From contig OZ004608.1 of assembly GCA_963924565.1 (NCBI GenBank), positions 25,730,001 through 25,794,000 of the forward strand: a stretch of DNA of 64,000 nt. The letters are read 5' to 3'. The notes beneath the pieces were generated by a model. That model did not search any database. It was not told the origin of the DNA and worked only from the letters and a program-made list of their open reading frames with translations. Numbering within the stretch: position 1 is the stretch's first letter; each line of letters starts with the position of its first letter. A program made the translations under genes and the position numbers. Source of the DNA: Ascidiella aspersa (Eukaryota). Shown in pieces: positions 3,489 through 63,040 of the stretch.

Positions 3489-3561
3489 ATGGCAGCATTC
3501 GCTGTGAAATTGTTCATCTGGTTCGTTGCTTTAAAGGTGGGAAAGTGCAACAGTCAGATAG
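3489..3561 (+). CDS. First coding exon, signal peptide MAAFAVKLFIWFVALKVGKCNS|QI
   Basis: ATG at 3489, hydrophobic core, small residues before the likely cleavage site, phase-1 donor G|gtacgt. It joins in frame to micro-exon 3786-3812 (ETSKSNAFS) and then domain 1. A candidate upstream acceptor 'cacag' ends at 3443. Confidence 0.65.
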
Positions 3562-6500
3562 GTACGTTTCAATATTTAAAAAGCTCTGCTGTTATTGTAT
3601 TATATTTTTCGTTTGCTAGTAAACAAACGCGACATACTGGATAACGTTAAACTCCGAAATGAATAAAAATAATAGAAGAACTTTTAAATTCGCAACTAAC
3701 CTAACTTTGTATCACTGCAAAGACCCCTATACATAAAACGACAAATATGGACTAATCATATAACTTTTGGTATTTAATATTTCAGAAACAAGCAAGAGCA
3801 ATGCTTTTTCAGGTAAACTTATATTTTTTGTTAAGCTTTAAAAGTATTAAACCTAATTTTGTTTTACCATGTATTAACCTAACTTTGTTTTACCCTGATT
3901 GGTTTAATCGTATACATTTAATCTTTTTAAGGGCCGTTTAATGTCAGTCAGGCCTTTGGGCGATGGCGAACGTTTGACACGACAGGCGGCGTCCCCAACT
4001 ACTTCAATTATACCTACGACGAATCGACGTCGAAAAGCATTTTGAATGGCGGGAAGGGCATGTACGATGGCGGAGGAAATATGGTAATCAATCAAACTTT
4101 AACATGGTTACGGGATAAGCATAAGGGCAAAGAAAATGCAAACTTACGCCCCCGAAGAAGCAAGCATATGCGTATGTTACCGTTATTGGGGTAAGGGAAG
4201 TAAAATGGGTTTCAACAAGAACAAAATTGTCTTTCCTTTTTAGTATATATATATATTTTATGTTCGGCTAATAGTAAACGAGTTATGTTCAGTGACACCA
4301 TAGCATTTAATAACAATTTTCCTTGTAGTACGCGGCCTTTCAACGTTGTAATACTTCGCTGTCAGATTAATACTTTAAACGCTCTTTGGATTGCAGAAAA
4401 CTAAGAAAATCGAAAAACCTTCATGCAATTCCACCCTCCCTGCAATACAATAATATCGTAGGTAGTATATCATAACTTATACCATAACTTGACAATCGTC
4501 CCTAATACACGACAGGGCAATAGGTTAATACAGAAGTTCAACATTTTTGTTCAACAATGTGCGTTTTAATCTGCAATGCTTGTCTACAAAGCTGTAATAA
4601 TACAAATAGTTATTTTTCAAATAACAAAACGTTGCGCGGAAAAACATCTCCCGAGGCACACAATTGGTGTGGCGCAGCACACAGCTTGAGAATCACTGCT
4701 TTAACGGGCTTGCTAATTGCTGTTTCAGATACGCTTTATCGTAAATGGAACGCCAACCAACGTCGTGTACAGTGAAACCTACGAGTAAGTAACATGTTTT
4801 GCACTGGGTGTTGTCTTTTCACTTTTATAAAAATACGCAAGTAAATGGTTAATCACACCACTGTGTGGTGTCTGGCCCAATAAAAACTTTAATACCACAC
4901 TTTGATTTAAAAATAACTGCCATAAAAAAACAAGTGATTTACAGCTTCGTTTAAATACGTTCTGAAAAGTTTACTTTTAAAAGTTAGCATTCAAAAAGTC
5001 ATCATAAAAGCTTTTTCTGATGACGTTGCACTTATGTGATAATGGAAATCACCTTGACCCTTGCAAGATAAAAGTTCATAACTCCTGATCAGTAATAGCA
5101 GAAAATGACGTTTTCAACTTTCGCCAGAAAATCCTCCCACGTGTTCTCGTCTTCGAAAACGTACCCGTTTCTCTTTGGTGGCTGGATATCTTCGATCAGC
5201 AACAGCAAGTTTGTGATTGAGGTATAAAGCTTGCGGTATTAGTCGACTCTTTTCCTCGCCAACCGTTTGGGAATGTTTCGTTCTGCTTGAGAATAACTTA
5301 ATTAATTTTCATTCCCATATTAAAAAATGGTTTTGTCCAGTGGCCAATTATGAATAAACAGACACTAGAGTAGCCTATATTAGTTCACACTAGAGGTGTC
5401 CGTAAATTTTATTTCGTTACCGGTATTACGTATAGCAGGGGTCGGCAACCTTTATTGCACTGCGGACCGGTTTTAAATCTGAAATTTTGTTACGGACCGG
5501 CTTTCAAAAAAATATCTGTTCAGTAAAAGAAATTTATTACAATTTTTTTCAATGCGATCTTTAAACTTGTTTTGCCGCAACATGATGCTCGTTTCTAGGA
5601 ATTATTAAACTTAATGAAACCCACGTGCGTTTTTTTTTCGGCCCGTCAAGCAATTAAACCCAGGCCGCGGCTCATTTCAAGCCGCTTTTATAGGCCTTAA
5701 AATGTTGTATTGAATAAGTTACACTTGTTGGCTATACCATTATCACCTATCCCAACTCTTACCAGCTTGTCAGAAAAAGGATAATTAAAGCATTCATTTA
5801 AATTTTAAAATAAGTCACACATTTCGGATCTATTTTTTGTACAGGCCCCAAACGACACTTTTTGTTTCCATAGCAGACGAAACGACTAAATACTTATAGT
5901 GACAATACAAAAAACGTATATGAACCACAGACTGACACCTGAAAAGTATAGAATAGACATTCGTACAAGACTTGCCAGATTGTTTACACCAAATTTAAAA
6001 AAATCTGGCTTTTTCAACGGGGTTGATGTCACAAAATTCATTCAGCATTTTGGCTTTTTTCTATCCTTTTTATAGAGGTTTGCTAAAGCTAATTAAAATA
6101 CATACATGTTTTTCGAAACCTTTTCTGCTTAAATATCAAAATAATAAATCATTTCATTATGTGACATTGTTTATAAATATTGTTTGCATGAATTTATTCT
6201 ATTTCACTTGAACATCAAAAACATGATATTTTAGCCCATTTTTCGATGTATTGTCATGAGGAGATTTTGCAATAAAAATATGCATTTTTGGATGCAACTC
6301 ATATGGCCACAGCACACTTGTTTTGAACCTCACGCGAGCTAATTGTTATTTTTCATCATACCAAACAATCATGAAGTATATTTAAACGAAAGTTAATGTA
6401 TTTGGAATATAAAAATACAGTTAATTGTTTTTTTACTTGTCCGGCTTTTTATGCACAGTTCGGGTTTAAATCAAAGTTTTGATTTGGCAACCCTGCTACG

Positions 6501-9500
6501 CCGGTAACGAACTTCTCGCGGACCGGCACCGGTCCGCGGACCGGCGGTTGCCGACCACTGACGTATAGGACAAAAAACGCATCGTGATCTTATATGATAG
6601 AAAAGTACGTCATTGCTATGCTAACCCAAGGAAAGTAGATTAAATAGAACCTTTAAATGTTTCGTCTTTTGTGATTGACCCAAATTTAGTTTGGCAAGAA
6701 GTTGAATTACCTCCAGGTATAAACCCCTTTTAAACTTGCTAAAAAATACCGTTCCAGATATGATTTGCTTGGTTGGACTGCAATTTTTTTATTAAATATT
6801 AATTTGGTATTGGATCGGCACCAACACGAACGAGTTTTAATACTACCTACCTAGTTTGCATTTAAACGAACAAAAATTCATATTGCCAAGCTTTTGTGTT
6901 TCATTTAGTAAAACAATATGGTCACGGTACCGCTCCGGTCGCTCCTTCAAAAATATATGACTTTATATTGGGTACTGTAGGATAATACAAAATTAGGAAT
7001 TAGTGAGATTGTTTTTGGTAAGCGTGGTACTATCATTACCGAGTTTTCCCCCATCAATGCGGTAATAAAGTATTGAACCATCACTGTCCAGAACAAACTT
7101 TAATGACAGCAAGTGCTTTTCCAGGTTTCTTCCAACTTCGGTTTTCCTGTTGCCGGAAGGGTTATCCAATTCAACGGATCCTTTCTTATTGGCGACCTTA
7201 GTTCCGTGGAATACGTAGTGTTTCAGTACGACAACGCACAAAGGGGACCGTCTGTTTGTGAAGTCTTCTTCACTTACACATATAGACTTCCCTGGGACGC
7301 CATGATAGAACGGGTATGTTTTTTATTATTATTTATATTTAACCAAAGATAGAACAAAAAAAATTTGATTGCATTTAATTGCTCGAAAAAACCTTTACGA
7401 ATTTATTTGCCCCAGAAATCGTTGACCTTGCATACTGGTAATAAAGCGGGAAATGGCATATCTGTACAATCTGCCGTTCTTTTGATAGAAAATTTGCCAC
7501 GCGGCACCTTCTTTGGATATACCCTGCTTTCAAAGTAAGTCGGTTAGATCTTTTTGATAAATTCGTTAAGCATTTACTTGCTTTTAAAGAAACTTCAGGA
7601 AATAAATGCAAGCCCATCAAAAAACTTTAAGACTAGGCGTTATTGTTTCGGAGACGGATTGATTTAGCAGGTGGCACGATGGACAAAAAAATTAGCACGT
7701 TGCACGTTAAACGGATATATCTGAGGGCGGAGTTCATGAAATTGTCCAACCTGGATTTAAGTTAATAAACAGTGTAATAAGAACATTAACGTTATTACTT
7801 TAGCAGCTATAAAATCTTTAAACGATGTAAAAGTTCACGTATATTAATTAAGATTGTTATATTATACTTTTAAAGACTGCCTTAGAACTGAAGGCTCCTT
7901 TAGGCCACTCCACTTCCTTCTTGTTCCGTTTTGTCATTAAACCGTATTCTGTTTTGTCATTAAAAGTGAACTAAATCTGTACTTTGAAGTAATAGTTTTG
8001 CTGTAAGTTAACACTAATTAAGGGCCAGAAATGAATTGAAAGTAAATTAGGAGAACAATGTCAGTAAAAGTGGCCCGCGCCGTAAAAAAAACGGTTGAAA
8101 ATTACTAGCATTATAGTAAATAGAATTTAACGATTTTTCGCTGCAGATATTTTGCAATCTGGCGTGACTTTTCGCATGTTTCAATCGCAACGAACTAATA
8201 TAATATTTAGGTGATTTAAGTATTCCTTTCGGTGATAAAAATATTTTAAGCTGTATGTTATCTATTCCAGAAAAGAAGGTGATACTGTAACAAAGCATGA
8301 AGTCGAAACTATGCTAGGATCGATAAATGCATTGACTTCTAGAAGTGTAGATTTCTTAACGCTTCTCAATGGTAAGTTTAAAATTTATTGTTTAGAGTCC
8401 TAAAATATATAATCAGTTATTAAATTCATGAAAAAATAGTTGTTAATATATTTCAATTTAACCTTTCGACTTTGCTAAACCTTAAGATAAATTAAAGTCG
8501 GCCTATTTAAACCAAATATAAGGCAAATGTTTCACACATGCATTTTGCTTACGCTTAATGAGAACACCATTTTTCAAGGATTATTTGTATTATGACGTCA
8601 TGTTATGACGTAAATTTGCGAAATCTTTCATGAAAATTTCAAAAGCAAAAATTCTGGAACGCTCCTGAACAGGATGCAGCAGGCCATGGTGTTTACTGTT
8701 ACAGTTCACTAAGCACGTATAACTCAGGCGGTATAGATCAGGGGTGGCCAACCAATTAGAGACCAAGAGCCGCAGTTTTTTACTGATTAACCGCTAAGAG
8801 CCACACCTTTCACAAGTACAGATCTAAACTTACAAATGCCTTACTAAGGGTATAGGATTATTATAAATGTTGCACACTAACAACATTGTGTAGGCTACAT
8901 TTAACGATTTTAAGGCACTCTGCAGGAAAGTTAAACAAATTTAGCGCAAAACGCGTGATTTTTTTTCACTAAAAACTGAAACTCAAATATAACCTGAACG
9001 TAAGAGCCGCATGAAACTGGTTGAAGAGCCGCCGTGTTGGCCACCCCTGGTATGAATAGAGCGAACGTCCCGGTTTGGCCGAGTTGCGAGTTTTTCAACC
9101 TCAACACCAGGGCGGATCCCTAAACTGATTTTTTTGCCAATTTGAACAACGTAAATGCGATTGTGATACTGCTATGTATAAGCCTATTTTGTAAAATCGT
9201 TTTAGCCCCAAAGGCGTCGTGAGCCTCATCGCACCCTTGAGAATGACACTTTTGGCAACTTAAACGATATGGAAGCGTTCTTTCGCTTGGCACGAAACGA
9301 TAACATCTCTATAATGTAGATTTTATATTAGAAGCAACACTTACGCAAACGAACTATTTGTGTGCTTTTCGTAAGAGACTTCTGTACGACGTCACGTTGA
9401 ATGTAACTTTGTGACGTCACGTTATTAGATAAATTTGTAACATCATGTATGAAAAAATTCATAGCCCCCTTAAACAAAATACTTAGATCCGGCCCTGCTC

Positions 9501-12500
9501 AACACATAGTATATTTTGTAGCCTGTCTTGCTTGCACTACAATTCGGATTGAGCCGCCTGCTTTCTGCAAGCCTTGCTGAAGGCATCTGGCGTACTCATG
9601 TATATATAGGTTTGCATGCTGAAATACACCCATTTTACCAACGCTAAAAATGTTATTATTTTATCAATTTTCACATCAATACATCACACAGGAATCGAAA
9701 GCAGTGGCGTTGATATGTTCGGTATGTAATTGTGTTAACTTACTAAAACACTCACCGATAAATACGAATGTTACTAGAAAAGTACTTTTATTAATTTCAG
9801 GACCAACAGTATTTTATTCTAATACCGCTTTTCATTACTTGGGTTAAAACGTATTTTGACTTAACCAAGCCAAAAATTAATCTCGTACGCCTTATATGTG
9901 CCAAATTATCAGCTTTTGATGATCGTTAAAATTTGTGAAACAATTAACCCAAACTAACCAAAAACAAATATATATACATAATTATAATTACTTATGGTTT
10001 TGATTACTAGTTAAGCGCGCGGTCAAAATTTGTTTTAACCAAAAATATATTGTAGTCAAATGGGAATGTTACGAACTGCAAAAACAACAGGGTTTTCGGT
10101 CCGATAATATTGCACTTTACTGTTCTTCCCACTGTACATTTAACTATTTACATGATTTCATAAGAAAAAAATTGTAACAATTCTAATAAGCGCTGTTATC
10201 CCCCTAATATTTTGTTGATAGATTTCGAAAATTTCGAAGATTTCGATCTTCCTCAGCCTGATTTGGACTCCATAGCAAACTTTTACGGTAATTGACGTCA
10301 TTTTGATGTTGTGCTCGTATTTGACGTGATTCTGTCATGTTAGGCTATCATTCACAAAAAGTGGCCAGCCGGTTAGATCAGGCCTGCAGGTTTCGATTCT
10401 AAGTCTGCAAAAACTTTAATGATTTCGATTATAAGGTTGTATTTGTTTTAAATGGAAAAGATTGTCAGATGGCAAACTACGAAAAATTTAAATAAATTTT
10501 AAGCTCAGCATATTAATTTTAAGTGTTTTTTTCGTTTTATTGGGTCACATAAGGTCACTACAAATTCTTGAGTTCGTCCCTTGAGTTCGGGACACGATCC
10601 TTTAAACACATTGTATGGATGAAATTGACTTTGTGTTCTCGAGCAAGAAATTTATTGTAGTGCGACAGTCAGTAAATACGGCAAGGGCAAATGCACACCA
10701 AGTTCTCGCATTATTAAAGTGAGTTGGCGGGAAGCCGAACTGAAGCAACTTTTTCGCTGCCAACACATCGCTCCATAATTCAGCTCAAAAGAGCTGCGAC
10801 AATTGAATTTCTGCCATCTCCTAACTGTAGAGTTATCCAGCCCGCGAACATAGAATTCTACGGCTCCCAACATTTTTGGTGACCCCCTACTCTACATGAC
10901 TCATAAAGTATTATAAAACAGTTTAGATTATCTTATTCAACTTTTTTCCACATTTTTTCTTCTATTAACCGTTATACTTTATACTTTGTTTTTGATGTAC
11001 AACAATTGAAGTTAGACTGTCGTTTTTTCAGAAACTACAGCGGATTTGATTCCGGCATCCACAACAAACGCGTTGTCATCTTCACCAAGAGCAGGTCAGG
11101 TTTCAACGAAAAGTTAACATCTCACTTTACAATCATCCCTAAATAATGTATATCGTTATTCAGCGTTACAACAGTAAACTAAACCATTCATTAAAACGTG
11201 GCTTCTTGACATATCATATTTGCTTGCCACGCAGGCCACAGATGGTTTACGTTAATTTAATTTTATAGAAACCAACGCTGCTGCGCGACTTCGTCAATTC
11301 TTGCTGAAGCACTCTGAAAATATCAGTAGCTCAGTGGCGGACTTTTACAAATACAGATACGACCAACTGTCAAATGTTCCCCCAGACAGACAGAATATGA
11401 CCCAGATTAATGACGGAGGCCGCGACATGTACGATGGTGGCAACCGGGTAAACTTTAACCAGTGTTGTAAAAAAGTTTATTTAAAATGGCTGAAGTCTCA
11501 GTCAAGTTATGTGTAAAATAACTTAGGTCCAAGTCAAGTATTTTTAATTAGTGACAAGTCGAGTCCCAGTCCAAGTCATCAGTTGCGCAAGTCAAGTCTC
11601 CGTCATGTCAGAATAAAAGCAAGTCAACTTCAAGTCACGTCCTTTAAGACTATAGTACGATTTTGAACAATAAATGAACTGAAAAATAAGAAAAACGCAA
11701 CATATAGCAAGCAATTTGTTTTATGTGCAAACATTTGGATAAATATCTTAATTATATAAAAAAAAAATCATTAAAGAAAACACTTCATTTCAAGTCAAGT
11801 CATTGTGCCTAAAAGTCAATTCATTTAAAAACAGTGACTTAAGTAATTACAACACTGCGTATAATTATATATGTTATAGAAACATTTAATAAAATCTTAT
11901 AAAATATTTCGCTACCAAACGCCAGCTAGTAATAACAGTTTATTTAGCTATTTTTTGATCAACCGTTTTATAAATAATCTTGGTAGTTATATCGGGCTTT
12001 CCGCAATACTAAGCAAAATGAAAAAAATACAAGAAGTATTCACAACGCGTGAATAACAAACTGGAACAACGTTTAAAAATGGAAACATCTCTGGCATAAA
12101 GAAATCCTTTTTGAAAGAGATTAGAATATGCTAAGCTTAAATAAATATGCATAACGGCCCTGGAAGCTGCTTGGTTTCCAATAAAAAACGACAATTTTTA
12201 ACTCTAACACCTTTACCTCTAATTACATTTTAAAGGTCCGATTTTCTGTTGGGTACAACGAAACATTGGCAATTTATAATCACAACTACACGTAAGTAAA
12301 TTGTTTGTAGATAACAATTGGTCTTTTTTGCTTAACGCATTCTTCGGTATTTTCCCGATACCACCCGGTTCGATTTGTTTTAGACGCTTGTAGCGCTCAA
12401 GTTAGGATCGGGGCTTTGAAGCGTCTGTGTTAAAACGTGTTAGAAATTTTACGCTTCATGCGGACTGTGTTACAACTGGATACAAGTGAACAGCGCATGC

Positions 12501-54500: not shown

Positions 54501-57500
54501 ACTCAGACAACAAAGTCTAAAGTATACTGATTTTGACTCAGACAACAAAGTCGAAAGTATACTGATTTTGACTCAGACAACAAAGTCGAAAGTATACTGA
54601 TTTTGACTCAGACAACAAAGTCCTGATTTTGACTCAGACAACAAAGTCGAAAGTATACTGATTTTGACTCAGACAACAAAGTCGAAAGTATATTGCTAAC
54701 ATTCGAAGTCATTGTCGTCATTGACGTGCTTTAGGGCGAGGAGATATCTTCTTTTTACATATTCACTGATTTTTACTCAGACAACAAAGTCTAAAGTATA
54801 CTGATTTTGACTCAGACAACAAAGTCGAAAGTATACTGATTTTGACACAGACAACAAAGTCGAAAATATATTGCTAACATTCGAAGTCATTGTCGTCATT
54901 GACGTGCTTTAGGGCGAGGAGATATCTTCTTTTTACATATTCAGTTTGCATGAGTCTTTAAAAGTGAGCATTTTCAACACATGTTTAGATGAGATAATCG
55001 TTGAAGTTTTACACTAACGTCTAACTCCTAAGTGAATGTATTCAACTGAATTGTACTCTTTTATGTAGTGACCACAGCGATTTCAATTTCCTCGATCGAC
55101 TTGCCGTTCGATCCAGACAACGTTACAGGTCTGTAACAGAAACACTTTTATTTTTACTTGAAATATAGAAACATTGCTAAACCCTTTAGAAAGTTCTCAA
55201 TAATGTTTACTTAATGTATTTGAGCAAGTTTACCCAAACTTATTTCAAACTAATTTCCACGCCTATTTATTGTCTGTGTTGCGTAGGGTCCGTTTGGAAT
55301 GCAATTGCCAATCAGAGCGCGACGCTGTTGTCAAATATACCTCAAGGTTTTTACTATTACAAATACGACGGAGGAAGATACTACATAAACGATGGTGGTG
55401 ACGATATGTACGACGCGGGAAATCGAGTAAGAGATATAAAAATCATACTGTATAAACAATTCCAATGTCACGTTTATATAACGACATCCAGAGTAAATTC
55501 AAATAGACCTAATAGAGCCATAGGCACCAGCAAAAGGCGGTAAGATGTTTCCAAAGGCACATGCTCGCAAAAGCTTGGTCGTGGACTGACGCAACAACAA
55601 GCTTAACGGGAATCCAGCTTTAATGGCCTCGGGTTTTCCGTTATTCTTTGTTAGAATATGAGCCTCTCTTGTGTGCCGTTCTTCAGTTTTTTAATCACCG
55701 AAACTCGAAGGTATTTAGCTTGTGGAATCGTTTGTTGGATTGTGCGTCAACAGTGTGTCAACGTTTTATGTTACAGTTGTCTTCAGTTAGGCTTTTTCTT
55801 ATGGGCCGGTTTGCCAACAGAAATTGCTTGGTTACATTACGTTTTGATTAAATAGCCCTTTTAAATCCTTTTGTCCTTTCAGGTTGAATTGGGAATAGCA
55901 GGGAACTTTACAGATTACCTCAAGTACAACTCGACAAATGTGTAAGAAAACTAAGAGTTGCGAATAATCGCAATAAAATAAATTTCGATTTTTCAAATTC
56001 GCACACATTCTAACATTTTTTTAATTTTCTTTATAGAAGCGACAATTACCAAGTTGGCGTATACGCCGGTTATCCCTTTACCACCTTGGTATGGATTGAC
56101 CCTCAAGACGACGAGATATACAATTACTCAATTCGGGTAAGGCTGGGCGTTTTGTGAATAATTAGACCCAACCAAAAGATCAAAGACAAGAAAAAATTTG
56201 GTTCAAAAATGAATAAATAAAAAAATTGGGTTTTTACATGATCTTAATATTCCTTTACTTTAAATTGCAAAATTGATATGTAACGCGACAGTAAGTCAAA
56301 ATGATATTTTAAGCGTGCCTTTTTTTTTATACTTAACGTTTGCATTGAAACAACTGTGTAGAATAATGGTAGGTTACTTTAAATGGCTATACTTTACATT
56401 CGAAGTTTATATTGATGCCCACAATCGAATTTAACATTATATTATTTTAATTCTCTGTTACGCATAATCTCGACTAACCCTACTGTTTTGATTGAATAAC
56501 TATTTAAAAAACAAACTATATATAAAGCTAATTAGCATGTTTACTTTGTTTAATACGGAGGTTAAAACGTAAATGTAGAGAACTTTACGTCACATACCAT
56601 TTTTTGCTGTAAAAAAGTACAGGCACGTTAAGCCTAAGGAATTTTTCGCTGAAACAATATTAATCGTTGAAAGTTTACCACCAGTCACCACGAAAGGTAC
56701 ATTTTTAACAAGGTGTCGGGAAATGCTGGTTCTGACGGTGGCGGAAGCCCGGAAATTTTCAAAGGAAGTGTGTCCGAAGGTACGACCACCGTCCACTACC
56801 ACGTGTTCCAAATTAGTGGTGCCGACGACCCTTTAATCTGTGAAGTCTATTTTGTTGTTTCTGATGAGGTGGGTACCTTTAAAATACAATATTTTGAGAT
56901 TTAAATAGAAATGTGGGCTTATATTAAATGGTATACCTAATTGCCTATGACTACTCAAGATAATCATTTTTCATAAAATTTTTGGTAACGGTCATTGTTT
57001 ATCGGTTATAGATCTTAAGATTCCAAAAGCCGTCACAAAATAACGTCTTGTTTAAACAATATACGCGTAAAAGACATTAGAACATAACACAGTATACGTT
57101 CGCAGACGAACGGTAATAAGTGCTGACAAGTCTGCATCACAATGATTTGTAAATAAATAAAAGTGCCGACAAATCATCCTTTCTTGATAAAATAATTTTG
57201 TAGATTTGTTTCGTTTTGTTGTGACAACACGACATAAGTTAGCAACACTGTATAAGGCAGGGGTTCCCAACCTTGTTTACACCGTGGGCTCCTTTAAAAA
57301 TTTTGAGAAATCAATGGCCCCCCTATTTTTTCAACCTTTTGAAAAAATTAAGAAACGTTATTTTAATTAAAAAAATTGGTTTATGCAGAAACCGTTCGAA
57401 TGATAAAATGATATTTATACCACACACAGTAATCATGATAGTACATTAAGTTATTAGTTTTATTAGGCTACATATTCAGTTGATGTGTTGGTTGAGCTTG

Positions 57501-60500
57501 TTTTTGCTCTGCCAATTTCTAAATTGCTGGTTTAGTGGTGGAAAGAGCCAGCAGCATGTCATATTGAATATCCTAGACACTGCACTGCTTTGTCTTCAAA
57601 TGTAACATTGTTGAAAAGCGGTAGTGGGATTCAAATTTCAGCCGGTTCGATCACAAAAATCACATTTTTCAGCCGGTTCTGTCACAAAAAGTCATCTTTT
57701 CCGGGAAATAATTAAAGTAGTTGCAAGAACAGGCTGCAACCCCAGGTTCCAGCGAATGTTGCGAACTGCGAACAGGCTGAATCCCATAAGCAACAGTAGT
57801 CTTCTCATTATGCAACAATTCAATTTTTCGAAAAAATTCACAAGAAAATTACTACAATTATAAAAAGTGATCACAATGGATGACTGATACGTAAGAACCT
57901 GTCCATTGCTCATTTTGAAGAAAAAAACACGTGAGCTACTTCGATTTCAAAAATCGGTGTATCAGATAAGAGATGCAAAAACCATTGACAGTAACCAGTA
58001 ATGCTGCTAACTTTGCATAGTTTTGCCCAAAATGTGGTCAAACCATATCTTTCTCAAAGCGAACTGGGTTGCCGTCTTTTTTGCGGCTTCAAGTGTTCAT
58101 TAAATTTGATTTATTTCTTTTGTGATTGTGGAGTAGACTTAGAGATAATAAACAAAACTTTTTTGTTTTCAAATTTTTTCATGGCCCCCTTAAAAAAGGC
58201 TCATGGCCCCTTGGGGGCCCACAGGTTGGGAACCTCTGGTATAAGGTGTATCGTTTCAGTTGCAAATATATTAATTGTATGTTAAACAGTGTAAAACAAT
58301 TGAAAAAATAAAACAAAACGTCGCGTTCACATCCGGGGACGTCAACCGCAGGTCTCGGTTTAAAGTTGTATTCTTTGTTTTTCAAACTAGAGTTATGAAC
58401 AGGGCAATATAATTACCAAAGACGTTGCTGTTGTTGCTAGACTATCAGAGCTAATTCTACTTACTTATACGCTAAAGTTTCCAATTAATTAGCTTGACTG
58501 CAAAATAGTAACTTTTTAACGCAAATCAGCTTCAGCTAATTTACCTCCATTTTGTGTTGAAACCTATTTAGAGATGGGGTTCATCAAATATTTTCGAGTT
58601 CAAAAAAGTTCGGTTTGACACAAGTCTCAATAATCTTAATAGCAGCGTTAGATTGGTAAGCAACCATCAAAGTGTCATGATGGGATATACACTACTTTCC
58701 TAGTAAGTATAACTATTTTATTTACACTAAAAAATATTATTTTTGTTATGCCGTTTGTACTACAAAAAAGTATTGTTTTTTAAAACGTTGTTCTTGGCCA
58801 ACACCATCCGTCAACATTTACGCTACGTTTTGCACCCGTTTTCCAGATTTAACTATGGTTTTACACAGTTTACCATGTTACTGTTGTCCAAATTATACTT
58901 CTTTAGATTTATATTTTAAGGCATTGCGACCAAAATGCGTTGCTTTTTGAAGTTGTGGTTTTACTTATATGAATATATACTACCCTATATTAGTAAAAAT
59001 TTGCAATTCTGTCAACCAGACCCAAATTAATATTTTTATCAAAACACTTATACAATGTTAACCCTAAAATTCTATCAAATTAAATATTTTTGCAAAAACA
59101 TAAAATACCGGTACTGAATTACATGATTGACTTTTATGAGCTAAACTCTTGATGATACGTTTTTCAGTCCGGAAGATGCTTCAAGGTTTGCCATATCGGA
59201 GGCTGCCATACGGAATTTCCTTATAGATCTGGGAAGAATTATTTCAACAACAATTGGTAAGAAGCATGCACATTGCATACCCATATGTGTGTTAACCATT
59301 GTGATCTAGCCCTTCTGGAGTTGCTTATTGACCAACGATTGCGGCTTTCGAATTATTAATACACCGAAATCCATCGCACACCCACGGAATCTGTCGGCCA
59401 ATGATGTAAGTTCAGTTTGTAGAGCAACGGTACTAGTGTAACCGGAGGTCGTAAGTTCGAACCTCTCTGCAGGCTAGTTGTTTTCTAGCATGACCTGCTT
59501 GCAACATTGGTCGACAGATTCGGTGAGTCTGCGATGGCTTTCGATTTATAATTGGTAAAATTTCGATTGGTGTTGTACCTATTTTAGTTATATCTCCTAA
59601 CGTGAATAGAATATTTTTTAACTTGAAGTTGTTTTACTTTAGAACTTAATAATATGACCACATCATCTCCCATTCAACCAACATCATCTAGTAAAGGTTG
59701 GTGTATTGTTATGGAAACCAATTTAGGAGACTTTTAAGATTTTGCTTTTGGGTTTTTGGATTTAGTAAACTATATCTAGCTTATTATAACAGAAAAGCAA
59801 AGTAAGATATCGTTTTTTATAACTCTGTGGCTACAATTTATGACATATTTTATGATGTAAACTTTTATGTGTTAAATTTACAAAAAAATAATGCTGTGTC
59901 TTCGACTGTAATACAATTAAAGAATTAACAATTAGCGCGCAACATTGCATTATTTCGTCATCTTTAAACATAATTTTTATATTGATCATGTATTCAATTT
60001 AAAATATTTGCCTTTATCAAAACTCTTCTTTCTTGATGAATTGATTTCACGATTTTCTTGTTTTTAAACAGCTTCTTCAACATCTTCGACGGCATTTGTA
60101 ACAAAAACAACTCGAGGGCCCCCTACAGGTATATTGTTAAAAAGTATGTTTGCTAGGTGTATTCCTATGGAACTAATTTAGGAGCTTAAACAAGAATTTG
60201 TTTTTGATTTTGTAGATTCAGTAAATTAAATCTAGCTTATTATAACAGGAATGCAAAGTAATATATCGTTTTCTTATATACATATTTCCGCTACAATCTA
60301 TGAAATACTTTAAGCTGCAATCTTTATTCTGCTAAATCGACTTTGTTACGATTAAAGAATTAACGATGAGTCTTTAAAATATAGACTTTCGACTTTGTGG
60401 TCTGAGTCAAAATCAGTGTCATTGTCGCCATTGACTTGCATAAGGGCGAGGAGATATTTTATTTTTACATATTCACTGCTTTTGACTCAGACAACAAAGT

Positions 60501-62652
60501 CGAAAGTATACTGATTTTTACTCAGACAACAAAGTCGAAAGTATACTGATTTTGACTCAGACAACAAAGTCGAAAGTATACTGATTTTGACTCAGACAAC
60601 AAATCGAAAGTATACTGATTTTGACTCAGACAACAAAGTCGAAAATATATTGCTAACATTCGAAGTCATTGTCGTCATTGACGTGCTTTAGGGCGAGGAG
60701 ATATCTTCTTTTTACATATTCAGTTTGCTTGAGTCTTTAAAAGTGAGCATTTTCAACACATATTTAGATGAGATAATCGTTGAAGTTTTACACTAACGTC
60801 TAACTTCTAGGTGAATGTATTCACTGAATTGTACTCTTTTATGTAGTGACCACAGCGATTTCAATTTCCTCGATCGACTTGCCGTTCGATCCAGACAACG
60901 TTACAGGTCTGTAACAGAAACACTTTTATTTTTACTTGAAATATAGAAACATTGCTAAACCCTTTAGAAAGTTCTCAATAATGTTTACTTAATATATTTG
61001 AGCAAGTTTACCCAAACTTATGTCAAACTAATTTCCACGCCTATTTATTGTCTGTGTTGCGTAGGGTCCGTTTGGAATGCAATTGCCAATCAGAGCGCGA
61101 CGCTGTTGTCAAATATACCTCAAGGTTTTTACTATTACAAATACGACGGAGGAAGATACTACATAAACGATGGTGGTGACGATATGTACGACGTGGGAAA
61201 TCGAGTAAGAGATATAAAAATCATACTGTATAAACAATTCCAATGTCACGTTTATATAACGACATCCAGAGTAAATTCAAATAGACCTAATAGAGCCATA
61301 GGCACCAGCAAAAGGCGGTAAGATATTTCCAAAGGCACATGCTCGCAAAAGCTTGGTCGTGGACTGACGCAACAACAAGCTTAACGGGAATCCAGCTTTA
61401 ATGGCCTCGGGTTTTTCCGTTATTCTTTGTTAGAATATGAGCCTCTCTTGTGTGCCGTTCTTCAGTTTTTTAATCACCGAAACTCGAAGGTATTTAGGTT
61501 GTGGAATCGTTTGTTGGATTGTGCGTCAACAGTGTGTCAACGTTTTATGTTACAGTTGTCTTCAGTTAGGCTTTTTCTTATGGGCCGGTTTGCCAACAGA
61601 AATTGCTTGGTTACATTACGTTTTGATTAAATAGCCCTTTTAAATCCTTTTGTCCTTTCAGGTTGAATTGGGAATAGCAGGGAACTTTACAGATTACCTC
61701 AAGTACAACTCGACAAATGTGTAAGAAAACTAAGAGTTGCGAATAATCGCAATAAAATAAATTTCGATTTTTCAAATTCGCACACATTCTAACATTTTTT
61801 TAATTTTCTTTATAGAAGCGACAATTACCAAGTTGGCGTATACGCAGGTTATCCCTTTACCACCTTGGTATGGATTGAACCCCAAGACGACGAGATATAC
61901 AATTACTCAATTCGGGTAAGGCTCGGCGTTTTGTGAATAATTCGACCCAACCAAAAGGTCAAAGACAAGAAAAAACTTGGTTCAAAATGAATAAATAAAT
62001 AAATTTGGGTTTTTACATGATCTTAATATTCCTTTACTTTAAATTGCAAAATTGATATGTAACGCGACAGTAAGTCAAAGTGATATTTCAAGCGTACTAT
62101 TTTGTTATTCTTAACGTTTGCATTGAAACAACTGTGTAGAATAATGTATAGGTTACTTTAAATGGCTATACTTTACATTCGAAGTTTATATTGATGCCCA
62201 CAATCGAATTTAACATTATATTATTTTAATTCTCTGTTACGCATAATCTGTTATCGACTAACCCTACTGTTTTGATTGAATAACTATTTAAAAAACAAAC
62301 TATATACAAACCTGATTAGCATGTTTACTTTGTTTAATACGGAGGTTAAAACGTAAATGTAGAGAACTTTACGTCACATACCATTTTTTGCTGTAAAAAA
62401 TTACAGGCACGTTAAGCCTAAGGAATTTTTCGCTGGAACAATATTATTCGTTGAAAGTTTACCACCAGTCACCACGAAAGGTACATTTTTAACAAGGTGT
62501 CGGGAAATGCTGGTTCTGACGGTGGCGGAAGCCCGGAAATTTTCAAAGGAAGTGTGTCCGAAGGTACGACCACCGTCCACTACCACGTGTTCCAAATTAG
62601 TGGTGCCGACGACCCTTTAATCTGTGAAGTCTATTTTGTTGTTTCTGATGAG
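3489..62652 (+). CDS. Giant multi-exon gene (3' end beyond window): secreted or cell-surface glycoprotein with signal peptide, >=12 tandem copies of an unassigned ~220-aa 'DGGxDMYDxGN' domain, Ser/Thr linkers and one mucin-like region
   Basis: About 88 exons bounded by AG/GT (two GC donors) join in consistent phase into about 3,200 codons without a stop. The same six-exon cassette (typically 140/59/97/159/119/86 nt) recurs 12 times with conserved motifs and identical intron phases. N-x-S/T sequons are frequent. Confidence 0.85.
3932..8371 (+). CDS. Domain 1 (divergent copy), six exons
   Basis: Exons 3932-4083 (..SILNGGKGMYDGGGNM), 4729-4784, 5128-5221 (..YPFLFGGW..), 7125-7313 (VSSNFG..PSVCEVFF..), 7416-7534 (..FGYTLLSK), 8271-8371. 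Phases 1-0-2-0-0-2-1. Confidence 0.8.
5436..6560. mobile_element. hAT (Charlie-type) non-autonomous element with a nested element at ~5966-6495
   Basis: TIR caggggtcggcaacc..ggttgccgaccactg with a perfect 8-bp TSD acgtatag. The inner element ends tggcaaccctg. Confidence 0.85.
8739..9049. mobile_element. hAT MITE
   Basis: TIR caggggtggccaac..gttggccacccctg with a degenerate 8-bp TSD gtatagat/gtatgaat. Confidence 0.8.
9108..9497. mobile_element. MITE with 8-bp TSD (hAT-like)
   Basis: cagggcggatc..gatccggccctg with a perfect TSD ctcaacac. Confidence 0.8.
9692..11094 (+). CDS. Linker micro-exons between domains 1 and 2
   Basis: Phase 1-1 exons 9692-9721 (GIESSGVDMF), 10222-10287 (DFENFEDFDLPQPDLDSIANFY) and 11032-11094 (ETTADLIPASTTNALSSSPRA). 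All have AG/GT ends and lengths divisible by 3. Confidence 0.55.
11269..14700 (+). CDS. Domain 2, six exons
   Basis: Exons 11269-11447 (..QINDGGRDMYDGGNR), 12236-12291, 13007-13115, 13333-13509 (VESNLGADGGG..TVCEVFF), 14182-14300 (..FGFVLLS), 14609-14700. Confidence 0.85.
11460..11857. mobile_element. MITE with internal CAAGT repeats
   Basis: TIR cagtgttgtaa..ttacaacactg and repeated tcaagtc motifs. No TSD is recognisable. Confidence 0.6.
12362..12805. mobile_element. MITE with ~45-bp inverted termini
   Basis: tcgatttgttttagacgcttgtagcgctcaa matches ttgagcgctacaagcgtttaaaacaaatcga in inverted orientation. Confidence 0.7.
15338..16261 (+). CDS. Mucin-like Thr/Ser/Ala-rich exon (308 codons)
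   Basis: Corresponds to ORF 15340-16299. Acceptor 'aacag' ends at 15337 and donor G|gtaagt is at 16261/16262, phase 1-1. It has a degenerate 36-nt (12-aa, TSE-containing) repeat and a 180-nt higher-order repeat. Confidence 0.85.
16938..18456 (+). CDS. Domain 3, six exons
   Basis: Exons 16938-17077 (GC donor), 17345-17403, 17498-17594, 17673-17831, 18052-18170, 18371-18456. Followed by linker exon 20900-20935 (DLPWNKALETFT). Confidence 0.88.
19285..19732. mobile_element. hAT MITE, present only in duplication copy 1
   Basis: caggggtgggca..tgcccacccctg with a perfect TSD ttctatgg. The empty site is near 31437 in copy 2. Confidence 0.88.
20044..20302. mobile_element. Fold-back MITE, present only in duplication copy 1
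   Basis: ttcgtcacgctcataaccaaattgcc..ggcaatttggttatgagcgtaatgaa with long inverted arms. Absent at ~31748 in copy 2. Confidence 0.75.
21160..23562 (+). CDS. Domain 4, six exons
   Basis: Exons 21160-21302, 21845-21903, 21980-22076, 22143-22301, 23248-23366, 23477-23562. Followed by linker exon 25937-25972 (EKYTSATKETNT). Confidence 0.88.
24085..25614. mobile_element. Triple-nested hAT MITEs (outer 24085-25614, middle 24470-25577, inner 24582-24878)
   Basis: TSDs ccctaggg/tcctaggg, ctctagtg/ctctagcg and gcttagct/gcttagct, each with CAG-type TIRs. Confidence 0.85.
26158..27621 (+). CDS. Domain 5, six exons
   Basis: Exons 26158-26297, 26490-26548, 26643-26739, 26819-26977, 27293-27411, 27536-27621. 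Followed by linker exon 28051-28098 (VPKTTNATKSTKPRYT). Confidence 0.88.
29037..30551 (+). CDS. Domain 6 (duplicate of domain 3), six exons
   Basis: Exons 29037-29176 (GC donor), 29444-29502, 29597-29693, 29778-29936, 30146-30264, 30466-30551. Linker exon 32558-32596 (DLHTANKALKTFT). Confidence 0.85.
32850..40520 (+). CDS. Domain 7 (duplicate of domain 4), six exons; its fourth internal intron is enlarged by a 5.4-kb transposon
   Basis: Exons 32850-32992, 33409-33467, 33544-33640, 33707-33865, 40206-40324, 40435-40520. Linker exon 42923-42958. Confidence 0.85.
34250..36350 (+). repeat. Degenerate ~138-bp subterminal tandem array (about 15 units) of the CACTA-like element
   Basis: A 'cgtgacgta'-like core recurs at about 34637, 34898, 35041, 35173, 35311, 35553, 35689, 36041 and 36179. 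Confidence 0.75.
37018..37216. mobile_element. Palindromic MITE nested inside the CACTA-like element
   Basis: Imperfect ~90-bp inverted arms (ggcactggtctagaatcctaccaca..tgtggtaggattctagaccagcgcc) flanked by the 8-bp direct repeat caattgca. Confidence 0.8.
38860..39530 (+). repeat. Right subterminal array (82-97-bp units) of the CACTA-like element
   Basis: 'ttacgtaaaaataacgtt'-like motif at about 39020, 39117, 39199, 39282, 39378 and 39460. Confidence 0.75.
41043..42601. mobile_element. Duplicate of the triple-nested hAT MITE cluster
   Basis: Same termini and TSDs as 24085-25614. Confidence 0.85.
43148..44614 (+). CDS. Domain 8 (duplicate of domain 5), six exons
   Basis: Exons 43148-43287, 43483-43541, 43636-43732, 43812-43970, 44286-44404, 44529-44614. 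Linker exon 45044-45091. Confidence 0.85.
45467..50719 (+). CDS. Domain 9, six exons
   Basis: Exons 45467-45606 (..FISDGGGDMYDEGNR), 45750-45808, 45879-45975, 46110-46268, 49574-49692, 50637-50719. Linkers 50821-50880 (ETMVTTNTTMVTTNTSTTPT) and 51229-51285 (ASSTSSTAFVTKTTRGPPT). Confidence 0.87.
46612..46690 (+). mobile_element. Degenerate tRNA-derived SINE-like head
   Basis: taagctcagtctgtgaaacgacggtcccggtttgacccaaagtcgtgagtttgcaccc..gcaggct. Similar to 59400-59475 and to the interrupted copy around 8711-9107. Confidence 0.4.
49767..50447. mobile_element. hAT-type MITE
   Basis: cagtggttcttcacc..ggttaagaaccactc with a degenerate TSD ttttaaag/tttcaaaa. Confidence 0.65.
51425..53383 (+). CDS. 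Domain 10, six exons
   Basis: Exons 51425-51576, 51719-51777, 52001-52097, 52481-52639 (VESNLGADGNG..AGDPSVCEVYFF), 52972-53090, 53295-53383. Linkers 53915-53971 and 55069-55128. Confidence 0.87.
54317..54870 (+). repeat. 35-bp minisatellite (11 units including one truncated, spacer, then 3 units) with an inverted copy at 54223-54257
   Basis: Unit ctgattttgactcagacaacaaagtcgaaagtata, arranged head-to-tail. Confidence 0.95.
55287..59256 (+). CDS. Domain 11 (divergent type), six exons
   Basis: Exons 55287-55426 (..YINDGGDDMYDAGNR), 55883-55941, 56037-56136, 56713-56868 (VSGNAGSDGGG..DPLICEVYF), 58572-58702 (..MGYTLLSY), 59168-59256. Linkers 60072-60128 and 60847-60906. Confidence 0.85.
57258..58238 (-). 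mobile_element. Internally deleted hAT (Charlie/Buster) element retaining a transposase C-terminal remnant
   Basis: TIR caggggttcccaacct..aggttgggaacctctg with a perfect TSD gtataagg. The minus strand at ~57480-57575 reads DIQYDMLLALSTTKPAI*KLAEQKQAQPTH, resembling the Buster/Charlie C-terminus. Confidence 0.8.
59400..59475 (+). mobile_element. tRNA-derived SINE-like head or pseudo-tRNA
   Basis: A-box-like taagttcagtttgtagagc, stem cggtac-tagt-gtaaccg and B-box gttcgaacc. The acceptor stem is not convincing. Confidence 0.55.
60476..60649 (+). repeat. 35-bp minisatellite, 5 units (paralog of the 54317 array)
   Basis: Same unit, with an inverted copy at ~60380-60416. Confidence 0.92.
61065..62652 (+). 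CDS. Domain 12 (duplicate of domain 11), first four exons; remainder beyond window
   Basis: Exons 61065-61204, 61662-61720, 61816-61915, 62497-62652. Confidence 0.82.
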
Positions 62653-63040
62653 GTGGGTACCTTTAAAATAGAATATTTTAAGATTTAAATAGAAATGTGG
62701 GCTTATATTAAATGGTATACCTAATTGCCTATGACTACTCCAGATAATCATTTTTCATAAAATGTTTGGTAACGGTTATTGTTTATCGGTTATAGATCTT
62801 GAGATTCCAAAAGCCGTCACAAAATAAAGTCTTGTTTAAACAATATACGCGTAAAAGACATTAGAACATAACACAGTATACGTTCGCAGACGAACGGTAA
62901 TAAGTGCTGCAAGTCTACATCACAATGCTTTGTAAATAAATAAAAGTGCCGACAAATCATCCTTTCTTGATAAAATAATTTTGTAGATTTGTTTCGTTTT
63001 GTTGTGACAACACGACATAAGTTAGCAACACTGTATAAGG

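What the first reader, a model, noticed from the sequence alone, without database searches (positions are those of the whole stretch)
3489..62652. Hidden giant secreted 'beads-on-a-string' glycoprotein built from >=12 copies of an unassigned ~220-aa domain
Seen in sequence: the ORF track shows only fragments, but spliced assembly gives a signal peptide plus 12 homologous domains plus mucin and Ser/Thr spacers, over 3,200 aa and still open at the window edge. Motifs I[SN]DGGxDMYDxGN, [YH]PF, N[LA]G[SA]DGxG, [VI]CEV[YF]F and G[YF]xLLS persist even in copies whose introns are unalignable (domains 2, 9, 10, 11; domain 1 partly). I do not recognise the domain as EGF, CUB, vWF, SEA, ZP, Ig, FN3 or a C-type lectin. 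Inference: an undescribed extracellular module used multivalently, for example in mucus or feeding net, tunic, adhesion, microbe binding or gamete recognition.
Basis: partly seen in the sequence, partly recalled or inferred. Interest (0 to 1): 0.9.

Follow-up and report, generated by a model that had tools for sequence, protein, structure and literature searches.

The report
Giant ascidian protein of twelve unnamed modules
The window holds most of one very large ascidian gene for a secreted, mucin-like protein made of twelve copies of a ~220-residue beta-sandwich module that no domain database names. The same module also occurs in bacterial surface proteins and phage or virus proteins, so it is probably an old microbial binding module that tunicates acquired and multiplied.

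Summary
Twelve homologous modules lie on the + strand, each built from six short exons with conserved splice sites and phases. A signal-peptide-like first exon, a 300-aa Ser/Thr-rich exon and short Ser/Thr spacer exons accompany them.

The single-gene reading is supported in three ways:
- All module and spacer boundaries are phase 1.
- Relatives (Phallusia, Ciona, Clavelina, Styela) have a signal peptide followed by 2-8 modules.
- A conserved Cys-containing C-terminal domain lies 3-5.5 kb beyond the window, as in Clavelina and Styela relatives.

It is not confirmed by RNA: the one RNA run available showed almost no reads.

The module has no Pfam, NCBIfam or PDB-sequence match. AlphaFold gives a confident helix, beta-sandwich, helix fold that weakly resembles galactose-mutarotase-like "supersandwich" carbohydrate-binding domains.

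The module is not animal-specific:
- It occurs in at least 120 bacterial genome stretches, mostly giant T9SS-type surface proteins.
- It occurs in 66 viral contigs.
- Among named eukaryotes it was found only in tunicates.
- This genome carries at least 108 copies.

My best reading is a multivalent, probably glycan-binding, secreted glycoprotein. The module probably came from microbes by horizontal transfer. Function and origin are inferred, not shown.

The parts
3489..3561 (+). Exon 1. ATG followed by a signal-peptide-like sequence (MAAFAVKLFIWFVALKVGKCNSQI); donor GTACGT; ends in phase 1.
   Evidence: It resembles the N-terminus of Phallusia P0001. No signal-peptide predictor was available.
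3932..8325 (+). Module D1, degenerate. Exons: E1 3932-4083, E4 about 7110-7274, E5 ending about 7535, E6 about 8251-8325.
11269..14701 (+). Module D2. Exons: E1 11269-11447, E2 12236-12291, E3 about 12966-13060, E4 13333-13509, E5 ending 14299 (donor AA|GTAAGA, phase 2), E6 14608-14701.
15338..16237 (+). Ser/Thr-rich (about 50% S/T/P) mucin-like exon, 900 nt, phase 1-1. An alternative donor lies at 16261.
16938..18456 (+). Module D3, used as the reference copy. Exons: E1 16938-17077 (GC donor), E2 17345-17403, E3 17498-17594 or 17606, E4 17673-17831, E5 18052-18170, E6 18371-18456.
20900..23562 (+). Short phase 1-1 exon at 20900-20935, then module D4 (E1 21160-21302 through E6 23477-23562).
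25937..27621 (+). Ser/Thr spacer exon at 25937-25972 (EKYTSATKETNT), then module D5 (26158-27621).
29037..30551 (+). Module D6, a recent copy of D3.
32558..40520 (+). Short exon at 32558-32596, then module D7, a recent copy of D4. The intron between E4 (ending 33865) and E5 (starting 40206) is 6.3 kb and carries an extra 5.4 kb at 34166-39547.
42923..44614 (+). Spacer exon at 42923-42958, then module D8, a recent copy of D5.
45467..50719 (+). Module D9. E5 lies at 49574-49692 and E6 at 50637-50719.
51229..53383 (+). Ser/Thr spacer exon at 51229-51285 (ASSTSSTAFVTKTTRGPPT), then module D10 (51425-53383).
53915..59256 (+). Spacer exons at 53915-53971 and 55069-55128, then module D11. Exons: E1 55287-55426, E2 about 55883-55940, E3 about 56037-56115, E4 56713-56868, E5 ending about 58698, E6 about 59167-59256.
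60072..64000 (+). Spacer exons at 60072-60128 and 60847-60906, then module D12 (E1 61065-61204, E4 62497-62652). Its E5 and E6 lie just past the window, at window-equivalent 64326-64451 and about 64900-65000.

Best explanation
The window contains exons 1 to about 85 of one large ascidian gene. The predicted product has a signal peptide, 12 tandem copies of a ~220-aa module, one long and several short Ser/Thr-rich (probably O-glycosylated) spacers, and a conserved Cys-containing C-terminal domain that lies beyond the window.

Each module is predicted to fold as two N-terminal helices, an ~11-strand beta-sandwich and a C-terminal helix. Three conserved Asp/Gly-rich loops (DGGxDMYDxGN, GNxGADGxG, GxxDPS) sit between strands.

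I infer that each module is a ligand-binding unit, most likely for a glycan and possibly metal-assisted. The protein would then act as a multivalent extracellular binder or cross-linker, for example of mucus, tunic polysaccharide or microbial surfaces.

The module family is shared with bacterial giant surface proteins and phage or virus structural-region proteins. Among named eukaryotes it was seen only in tunicates, where it has expanded to at least 108 copies in this genome. That pattern is best explained by one ancient transfer from a microbe or virus, followed by intron gain, exon shuffling at phase-1 boundaries and tandem duplication.

Shown: the modules, their exon structure, purifying selection, the homologues, and a confident fold model made from a Phallusia single-module relative. 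Inferred: one transcript, secretion, glycan binding, horizontal origin.
For: Anatomy and selection:
- Module layout, conserved splice phases and open exons.
- Purifying selection between modules.
- Phase-1 compatibility of the signal exon, all modules, the mucin exon and the spacer exons, with no ATG or signal exon in front of internal modules.

Architecture in relatives:
- Phallusia P0001 has a signal peptide and 7-8 modules. Ciona P0002 has 7. Clavelina P0003 has a signal peptide, 4 modules and the C-terminal domain.
- P0006 is 1112 aa on a 3670-nt contig, which leaves no room for introns, so it is transcript-like. It carries 3 modules plus the same C-terminal domain.
- Four exons downstream of the window align colinearly, with conserved cysteines, to that C-terminal domain.
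- No further module lies downstream on this chromosome.

Fold: AF2 model with pLDDT 86.7 and pTM 0.86. The top 50 VIA-align hits are almost all galactose-mutarotase-like supersandwich domains of glycoside hydrolases, phosphorylases, lyases and epimerases, with Z 6.2-8.3. Foldseek's weak hits are of the same kind.

Partner domains are adhesive or glycan-binding:
- CUB, Sushi, Kringle, WSC and Ig in relatives.
- Insertion inside the intelectin fold.
- HYR, FG-GAP, TIG, BACON, LamG and T9SS tails in bacteria.
- A PA14-like sequence, recognised by eye, in one viral protein.
- Tail-fibre-like neighbourhoods.

Microbial homologues. In the tree, tunicate-type domains form one clade with support 0.93-0.94.
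Against: - RNA: the only RNA run of this species gave about 10 reads on the 5.9 kb tested and no joints. So one transcript, or any expression at all, is not shown here.
- Some linkers are unresolved. A conserved exon-like piece after E6 in D3 and D6 (18528-18609) ends in phase 2 and fits no simple chain.
- A stop-containing exon-like piece at 28228 (also 45218) coincides with the few RNA reads and could be an alternative terminal exon.
- The fold match is only borderline: Z about 8 is what unrelated models often reach, and identity is 4-11%.
- No ligand, metal site or expression site was tested.
- For the origin, the tree is unrooted and tunicate domains are not nested inside a microbial clade. 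The search for other eukaryotes used a single-exon profile and a word-indexed search, so distant eukaryotic members could have been missed.
Confidence: 0.6

Rival explanations
1. The locus is a tandem array of several separate genes (for example SP+D1-D5, D6-D8, D9-D12), or produces mainly shorter isoforms, rather than one >3,000-aa protein.
For: - The duplicated block boundary at 28411 lies between D5 and D6.
- An exon-like piece at 28228-28250 (also 45218) would read ACQYST-stop in the phase left by E6. The only RNA reads on the tested stretch lie at 28185-28578 and 27397-27790.
- Single- and two-module proteins exist in relatives (P0082, P0009).
Against: - No ATG plus signal-peptide exon was found in front of any internal module.
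- Every internal module starts in phase 1 and needs an upstream exon.
- Ser/Thr spacer exons with good splice sites sit between modules.
- Relatives carry up to 8 modules in one protein, and the C-terminal domain follows D12.
Confidence: 0.2
2. The module is an enzyme domain (for example a glycan-modifying or epimerase-like unit) rather than a binding module.
For: The conserved residues are mostly Asp, Asn and Tyr in loops. The nearest folds belong to carbohydrate-active enzymes and aldose epimerases.
Against: - Twelve tandem copies separated by mucin-like linkers is an arrangement typical of binders, not enzymes.
- In most of the matched enzymes (glycoside hydrolases, phosphorylases, lyases) the supersandwich is the non-catalytic accessory domain (established knowledge).
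- Partner domains are adhesive.
- D1 has lost the acidic residues but is retained.
Confidence: 0.1
3. The domain is ancient and vertically inherited, and was lost in nearly all other eukaryotes. Alternatively, microbes and viruses took it from tunicate-like hosts. Either way there was no microbe-to-tunicate transfer.
For: The tunicate clade is not nested inside a microbial clade. The tree has three separate groups and no root. One virus protein with a PA14-like C-terminal region, which I took for a giant-virus protein, falls on a long branch with the eukaryotic group.
Against: - The domain spans many bacterial phyla (Bacteroidota, Verrucomicrobiota, Planctomycetota, Cyanobacteria, Acidobacteria and others) and many phages.
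- Named eukaryotic hits are tunicates only, in searches of 1.8 and 5.8 billion proteins.
Confidence: 0.25

Closest known systems
'Uncharacterized protein LOC104266555' of Ciona intestinalis (XP_078491493.1) and Phallusia mammillata (CAB3263223.1); LOC143469517 of Clavelina lepadiformis
   Same: They use the same module (50-60% identity per exon) in the same beads-on-a-string layout with Ser/Thr linkers. The first module is degenerate in the same way. Clavelina has the same C-terminal Cys domain.
   Different: The module number differs (4-8 versus 12). The window's species has its own recent three-module and one-module duplications and a 300-aa mucin exon. None of these proteins has been characterised.
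Galactose-mutarotase-like 'supersandwich' domains (N-terminal domains of GH94, GH65, GH15, GH31, GH63 and GH116 enzymes, aldose 1-epimerases, the PL8 C-terminal domain)
   Same: A large two-sheet beta-sandwich of similar size. These domains fill nearly all of the top 50 structural matches, with Z 6.2-8.3 and 140-197 aligned residues.
   Different: Sequence identity is only 4-11%, with no profile match. The Z values are in the range that unrelated folds can reach. The module adds flanking helices and its own three Asp/Gly loops.
Gel-forming mucins and DMBT1-type multi-module secreted glycoproteins
   Same: A signal peptide, many repeats of one globular module, Ser/Thr-rich spacers and a Cys-containing C-terminal domain.
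   Different: No vWD, CTCK, SRCR, CUB or ZP domain was detected in full-length relatives. The module is unrelated, and the C-terminal domain is predicted helical at low confidence.
Bacteroidota T9SS-secreted giant surface proteins and phage tail-fibre-region proteins that carry the same domain
   Same: The same domain, recognised by HMM, by motifs and by spacing (about 64 aa between motifs 1 and 2). The setting is extracellular and adhesive.
   Different: Microbial proteins usually have one or two copies mixed with HYR, FG-GAP, Ig or LamG domains and a sorting tail. They have no introns and no mucin linkers. They form clades separate from the tunicate domains.
Intelectins (X-type lectins)
   Same: In Ciona savignyi H2YWI5 the module sits inside an intelectin fold. 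Styela LOC120328249 shows a Fibrinogen_C match ahead of its module. This links the module to glycan recognition.
   Different: The window's gene has no intelectin part, and the module itself is not an intelectin fold.

Membership tests
Unnamed DGGxDMYDxGN / GNxGADGxG module family (tunicates, bacteria, viruses) | Motif 1, [YF]xYD...IxDGGxDMYDxGN, at the start of the sandwich | tested here: met
   Present in D2-D12. D1 is degenerate (NGGKGMYDGGGN)..
Unnamed DGGxDMYDxGN / GNxGADGxG module family (tunicates, bacteria, viruses) | Motif 2, (S/G)NxG(A/S)DGxG, 60-80 residues after motif 1, followed by GxxDP(S/T)(V/I)CEV | tested here: met
   Present in all 12 E4 exons. The spacing in bacteria is 63-70 aa in 101 of 132 ORFs.
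Unnamed DGGxDMYDxGN / GNxGADGxG module family (tunicates, bacteria, viruses) | Match to a profile of the whole domain, exon by exon and colinear | tested here: met
   The domain HMM hits E1, E3, E4, E5 and E6 in order. The exon-4 profile gives E down to 6.6e-31 in this genome.
Known extracellular Pfam domains (EGF, CUB, vWD, SEA, ZP, Ig, FN3, C-type lectin and others) | Significant match to the family's HMM | tested here: not met
   There was no Pfam hit on the window's exon pieces at E up to 10. There was none on the module regions of full-length relatives or microbial homologues. NCBIfam also gave none.
Gel-forming mucins | vWD assemblies and a C-terminal cystine knot | tested here: not met
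   Pfam finds none in P0001, P0003, P0006 or P0010. The downstream C-terminal domain aligns to a different, unnamed Cys domain.
Galactose-mutarotase-like supersandwich superfamily | Structural superposition clearly above background | tested here: inconclusive
   The best VIA-align match has Z 8.3, rmsd 3.9 A and 179 aligned residues, and the list of matches is coherent. But Foldseek gave no hit at E<=1e-3, and Z about 8 is near the tool's stated background.
Horizontally acquired tunicate genes (criteria of PMC13390645) | Encoded on a chromosome with introns, with orthologues in other tunicates | tested here: met
   The window lies in a 39.8-Mb contig, and each module has 5 introns. Orthologues exist in Ciona, Phallusia, Clavelina and Styela.
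Horizontally acquired tunicate genes (criteria of PMC13390645) | Absent from other eukaryotes and related to microbial sequences | tested here: inconclusive
   Named eukaryotic hits are tunicates only, and microbial homologues are many. But the eukaryote search used one exon's profile and a word-indexed search, and the tree gives no donor.
Horizontally acquired tunicate genes (criteria of PMC13390645) | Supported by mapped RNA reads | tested here: inconclusive
   There were about 10 reads on 5.9 kb from 6% of one run, and none on module exons at useful depth.

The most novel reading that the evidence does not exclude
A binding module of bacterial or viral origin was transferred once into the tunicate stem lineage, where it gained introns and became a shuffling unit. 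It fused with CUB, Sushi, Kringle and WSC domains, was inserted into intelectin, and expanded to more than 100 copies. It would now build giant multivalent glycoproteins tied to tunicate-specific extracellular matrices such as the cellulose tunic or the mucus net. That would make it a second structural-matrix acquisition beside cellulose synthase.
Probability: 0.35. Interest if true: 0.8.

Novelty: new variant of a known kind. Interest (0 to 1): 0.62.

Why it matters
Tunicates are the vertebrates' closest relatives, and they make unusual extracellular matrices using at least one gene taken from bacteria (cellulose synthase). This report describes an unnamed domain family with a confident predicted fold. 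It has hundreds of microbial and viral members and a large tunicate expansion, and it is absent from the latest survey of transferred genes in Ciona (PMC13390645).

Defining the family would annotate over a hundred gene segments in this genome, many proteins in other tunicates, and many giant bacterial surface proteins and phage proteins. If it binds a glycan, it offers a new lectin class. It would also give a concrete test of how foreign modules are built into animal matrix or immune proteins.

Tried and rejected
- Pfam on exon pieces gave nothing.
- ESM Atlas look-ups of a Phallusia module and a bacterial module gave no usable hit.
- A word-indexed search with the single-module protein P0082 found only its own paralogue.
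- RNA evidence: one RNA run of the species was laid on 27200-33100. There were essentially no reads on exons and no joints, so this gives no verdict on splicing or expression. The two other runs are DNA contigs and did not settle whether the duplicated blocks are real.
I replaced it with a degenerate DNA pattern.
- The AF2 model of the C-terminal Cys domain (within P0049) had low confidence, with pLDDT 35-82, and was not searched further.
- tRNA and Rfam scans of the window found nothing.
- A literature search for the locus name found nothing.
- Earlier notes of this scan held nothing on this locus.
- Several candidate exons were rejected or left open. The piece at 27709-27788 lies in a high-copy repeat and contains a stop. 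The piece at 18528-18609 (and 30625-30708) ends in the wrong phase.
- The bacterial hit P0011 in the first search (14 partial stretches, none of the motifs) was set aside as a repeat artefact.
All searches used single exons by reference or database relatives.

Full report
**What is in the sequence**

The window is AT-rich (about 35% GC) and has no long ORFs except one Ser/Thr-rich frame.

Using the exons of one well-preserved copy as tblastn queries and then an HMM of the full domain, I placed 12 modules. Each consists of six exons:
- E1: ...NFHNY...ISDGGxDMYDxGN
- E2: VYFxVG...YNxxY
- E3: ...HPFTAxF...
- E4: VESNLGSDGxG...GDxTVCEVYF
- E5: ...GYTLLS
- E6: a helix, PSGxxITxxEIxATMFTMM...

Acceptors are AG behind pyrimidine tracts. 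Donors are mostly GTAAGT; the E1 donor of D3 and D6 is GCAAGT. The phases are the same in every copy: 1>0, 0>2, 2>0, 0>0, 0>2, 2>1. The E3 donor of D3, D5, D6 and D8 has two in-phase candidates 12 nt apart, which I left open.

All 48 exons of D3-D10 are open. Pairwise dN/dS summed over exons is 0.14-0.40, with dS up to saturation. The only high value (0.91) is for D4/D7, which differ at very few sites. These are therefore selected coding exons, not chance ORFs or dead copies. D1 is a degenerate copy, as is the first module of the Phallusia relative.

**One gene or many**

The first exon (ATG at 3489) encodes a signal-peptide-like sequence and ends in phase 1. E1 of every module begins in phase 1 and E6 ends in phase 1. 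Several further exons are also phase 1-1 with good splice sites:
- the 900-nt Ser/Thr-rich exon at 15338-16237
- the short spacer exons at 25937, 42923, 51229, 53915, 55069, 60072 and 60847
- the short exons at 20900 and 32558

Any module can thus be spliced to the next in frame. This is the classic signature of a 1-1 shuffling unit. I found no ATG plus signal exon ahead of internal modules.

A profile of exon 4 searched against 1.84 billion proteins returned tunicate proteins with several modules:
- Phallusia mammillata CAB3263223.1: signal peptide and 7-8 modules
- Ciona intestinalis XP_078491493.1: 7 modules
- Clavelina lepadiformis LOC143469517: signal peptide, 4 modules and a C-terminal domain
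- Styela clava LOC120335290
- P0006: a 1112-aa protein on a 3670-nt contig, which leaves no room for introns

Identity to the window is at most about 60%, so the window's species is none of these.

In the species' own genome the exon-4 profile finds the 12 copies of the window and no more nearby. So D12 is the last module. Downstream DNA holds D12's E5 and E6. Four further exons, 2.8-5.5 kb past the window end, align colinearly to the C-terminal domain of the Clavelina, Styela and P0006/P0049 proteins, with the cysteines conserved.

This frames the locus as signal peptide, 12 modules, C-terminal domain. All steps were done exon by exon, or on database relatives.

**What RNA says**

Only one RNA run of the species was offered. 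It was laid on 27200-33100, which covers the D5-D6 and D6-D7 junctions. It gave about 10 reads outside a high-copy repeat and no joints. This is no verdict, either on splicing or on expression.

The few reads lie at 27397-27790 and at 28185-28578. The second interval holds an exon-like piece that would read a stop after six codons in the phase left by E6. An alternative terminal exon there cannot be excluded, and I carry this as the main rival.

**Recent duplication**

The window contains two pairs of near-identical blocks:
- 16316-28411 (D3-D5) and 28411-45404 (D6-D8) are 96-97% identical including introns. The second block has an extra 5.4 kb.
- 53404-58237 and 59565-64000 (D11 and D12) are 97% identical.

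The breakpoints lie in phase-1 introns, so the frame is kept. Contigs of two other DNA runs differ from the window by roughly 0-2%, which is less than the divergence between the blocks. That favours true paralogous copies over uncollapsed alleles, but I could not prove it.

**What the module is**

No Pfam family matches the module. This holds for the window's exon pieces, the full-length tunicate relatives and the microbial homologues. NCBIfam and PDB sequences give nothing either.

An AlphaFold2 model of a single-module Phallusia protein, made with a 20-row alignment, is confident (pLDDT 86.7, pTM 0.86). It shows two N-terminal helices, about eleven strands and a C-terminal helix. A second model shows the same pattern. 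The three conserved motifs fall in loops between elements.

Foldseek against the PDB gives no hit at E<=1e-3. VIA-align against 48,161 chains gives Z 6.2-8.3. Almost every one of the top 50 is a galactose-mutarotase-like supersandwich domain of a glycoside hydrolase, phosphorylase, polysaccharide lyase or aldose epimerase. The tool warns that Z about 8 is near background. I therefore call this a coherent but borderline fold resemblance, not membership.

**The module is not confined to animals**

A profile of the whole domain found microbial proteins with the same motifs in the same order. Two of them are Bacteroidota proteins with Ig-like and SprB domains and type IX secretion tails.

The exact motif DGGxDMYDxGN, written as a degenerate DNA pattern, has a chance expectation of about 0.1 match in the collection by my estimate. 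The phyla include Bacteroidota, Verrucomicrobiota, Planctomycetota, Cyanobacteria, Acidobacteria, Zixibacteria and others. Of these loci, 111 carry a near-full domain by HMM, and 101 of 132 ORFs have motif 2 at 63-70 residues. Most sit inside ORFs of 1,000 to over 2,600 aa, alongside HYR, FG-GAP, TIG, BACON or sorting domains.

The same pattern hit 66 IMG/VR viral contigs, 54 of them with a near-full domain. Foldseek against predicted viral structures found three uncharacterised phage proteins at E 6e-12 to 5e-8. Two small homologues sit beside Laminin_G_3, Gly_rich_2 and Mtd_N genes, or beside DNA polymerase B and T4 gp13 genes. One viral protein carries a C-terminal region that looks PA14-like by eye.

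In a maximum-likelihood tree of 187, then 241, domains, all 56 tunicate or tunicate-like domains form one clade with support 0.93-0.94. It is separate from a bacterial clade and a mostly viral clade. No donor can be named.

Among proteins that carry a species name, the eukaryotic hits are tunicates only. The unnamed metatranscriptome proteins that group with them have animal partner domains: Kringle, WSC, Sushi and CUB. The most recent survey of transferred genes in Ciona does not list this family, and its filters would have missed it (PMC13390645).

**How it most likely works**

The evidence comes from three things: the architecture (many copies on flexible, probably glycosylated linkers), the fold class, and the company the domain keeps. 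That company includes:
- lectin-type and adhesive domains in animals, and insertion into the intelectin fold in Ciona savignyi H2YWI5
- surface adhesin-like giants in bacteria
- tail-fibre-region genes in phages

From these I infer that the module binds a surface ligand, most likely a carbohydrate. The Asp/Gly loops could form the site, possibly with a metal ion. The window's product would then be a secreted multivalent binder or cross-linker. The C-terminal Cys domain could mediate oligomerisation, and a TM-like exon further downstream could anchor the protein. Both are unverified.

No tool here could test ligand, metal, secretion or tissue.

**Verdict**

However, the gene's relatives are already in databases as uncharacterised proteins, and the module is an old microbial and viral domain rather than an animal novelty. 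One transcript and the protein's function remain to be shown.

The added value of this follow-up lies in five results:
- the definition of the family across bacteria, viruses and tunicates
- its predicted fold
- its expansion to at least 108 copies in this genome
- the phase-1 module logic
- a plausible horizontal origin

Noticed in passing
G000: C8 8.52-9.00 Mb and 10.02-10.21 Mb; C6 0.95-0.99 and 20.9-21.0 Mb; also C3 and C1: The same module's exon 4 occurs at least 108 times in this 308.6-Mb genome. Most copies lie in large clusters on another chromosome-scale contig, on both strands. The family is far larger than this one gene.
   Followed up: partly
window 32367-32495: A ~130-bp element with enormous depth in both DNA runs (mean word depth up to about 1.3 million). 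RNA reads pile on it in both orientations. It is a very high-copy dispersed repeat inside the D6-D7 intron, with no tRNA or Rfam match.
   Followed up: partly
window 16316-45404 and 53404-64000: Two recent tandem segmental duplications, 96-97% identical including introns. One has a three-module unit of 12 kb and the other a one-module unit of 5.8 kb. The second copy of the larger unit carries an extra 5.4 kb at 34166-39547.
   Followed up: partly
L001 9418-9624 (about 7.4 kb past the window end): An open frame encodes a hydrophobic stretch followed by RYRRMRRQ and a stop. It looks like a type-I transmembrane anchor with a short tail. Whether it belongs to this gene or the next is unknown.
   Followed up: no
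P0034 (Ciona savignyi H2YWI5), P0053 (Styela clava LOC120328249): In P0034 the module is inserted inside an intelectin (X-type lectin) fold, between residues equivalent to about 216 and 253 of the solved lectins. This is a domain-in-domain lectin architecture. P0053 shows only a Fibrinogen_C match ahead of its module.
   Followed up: partly
window 27594-27987 and 44690-44790: An exon-like ORF piece after E6 of D5 and D8 lies in a segment with 10-20 times the DNA depth of its surroundings. It is probably a transposable-element fragment, not an exon.
   Followed up: no
L150 (IMG/VR contig of 63 kb): A 411-aa viral protein joins this module to a C-terminal region that looks PA14/GLEYA-like by eye (no Pfam scan was run). 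It falls on a long branch with the eukaryotic domains in the tree.
   Followed up: no
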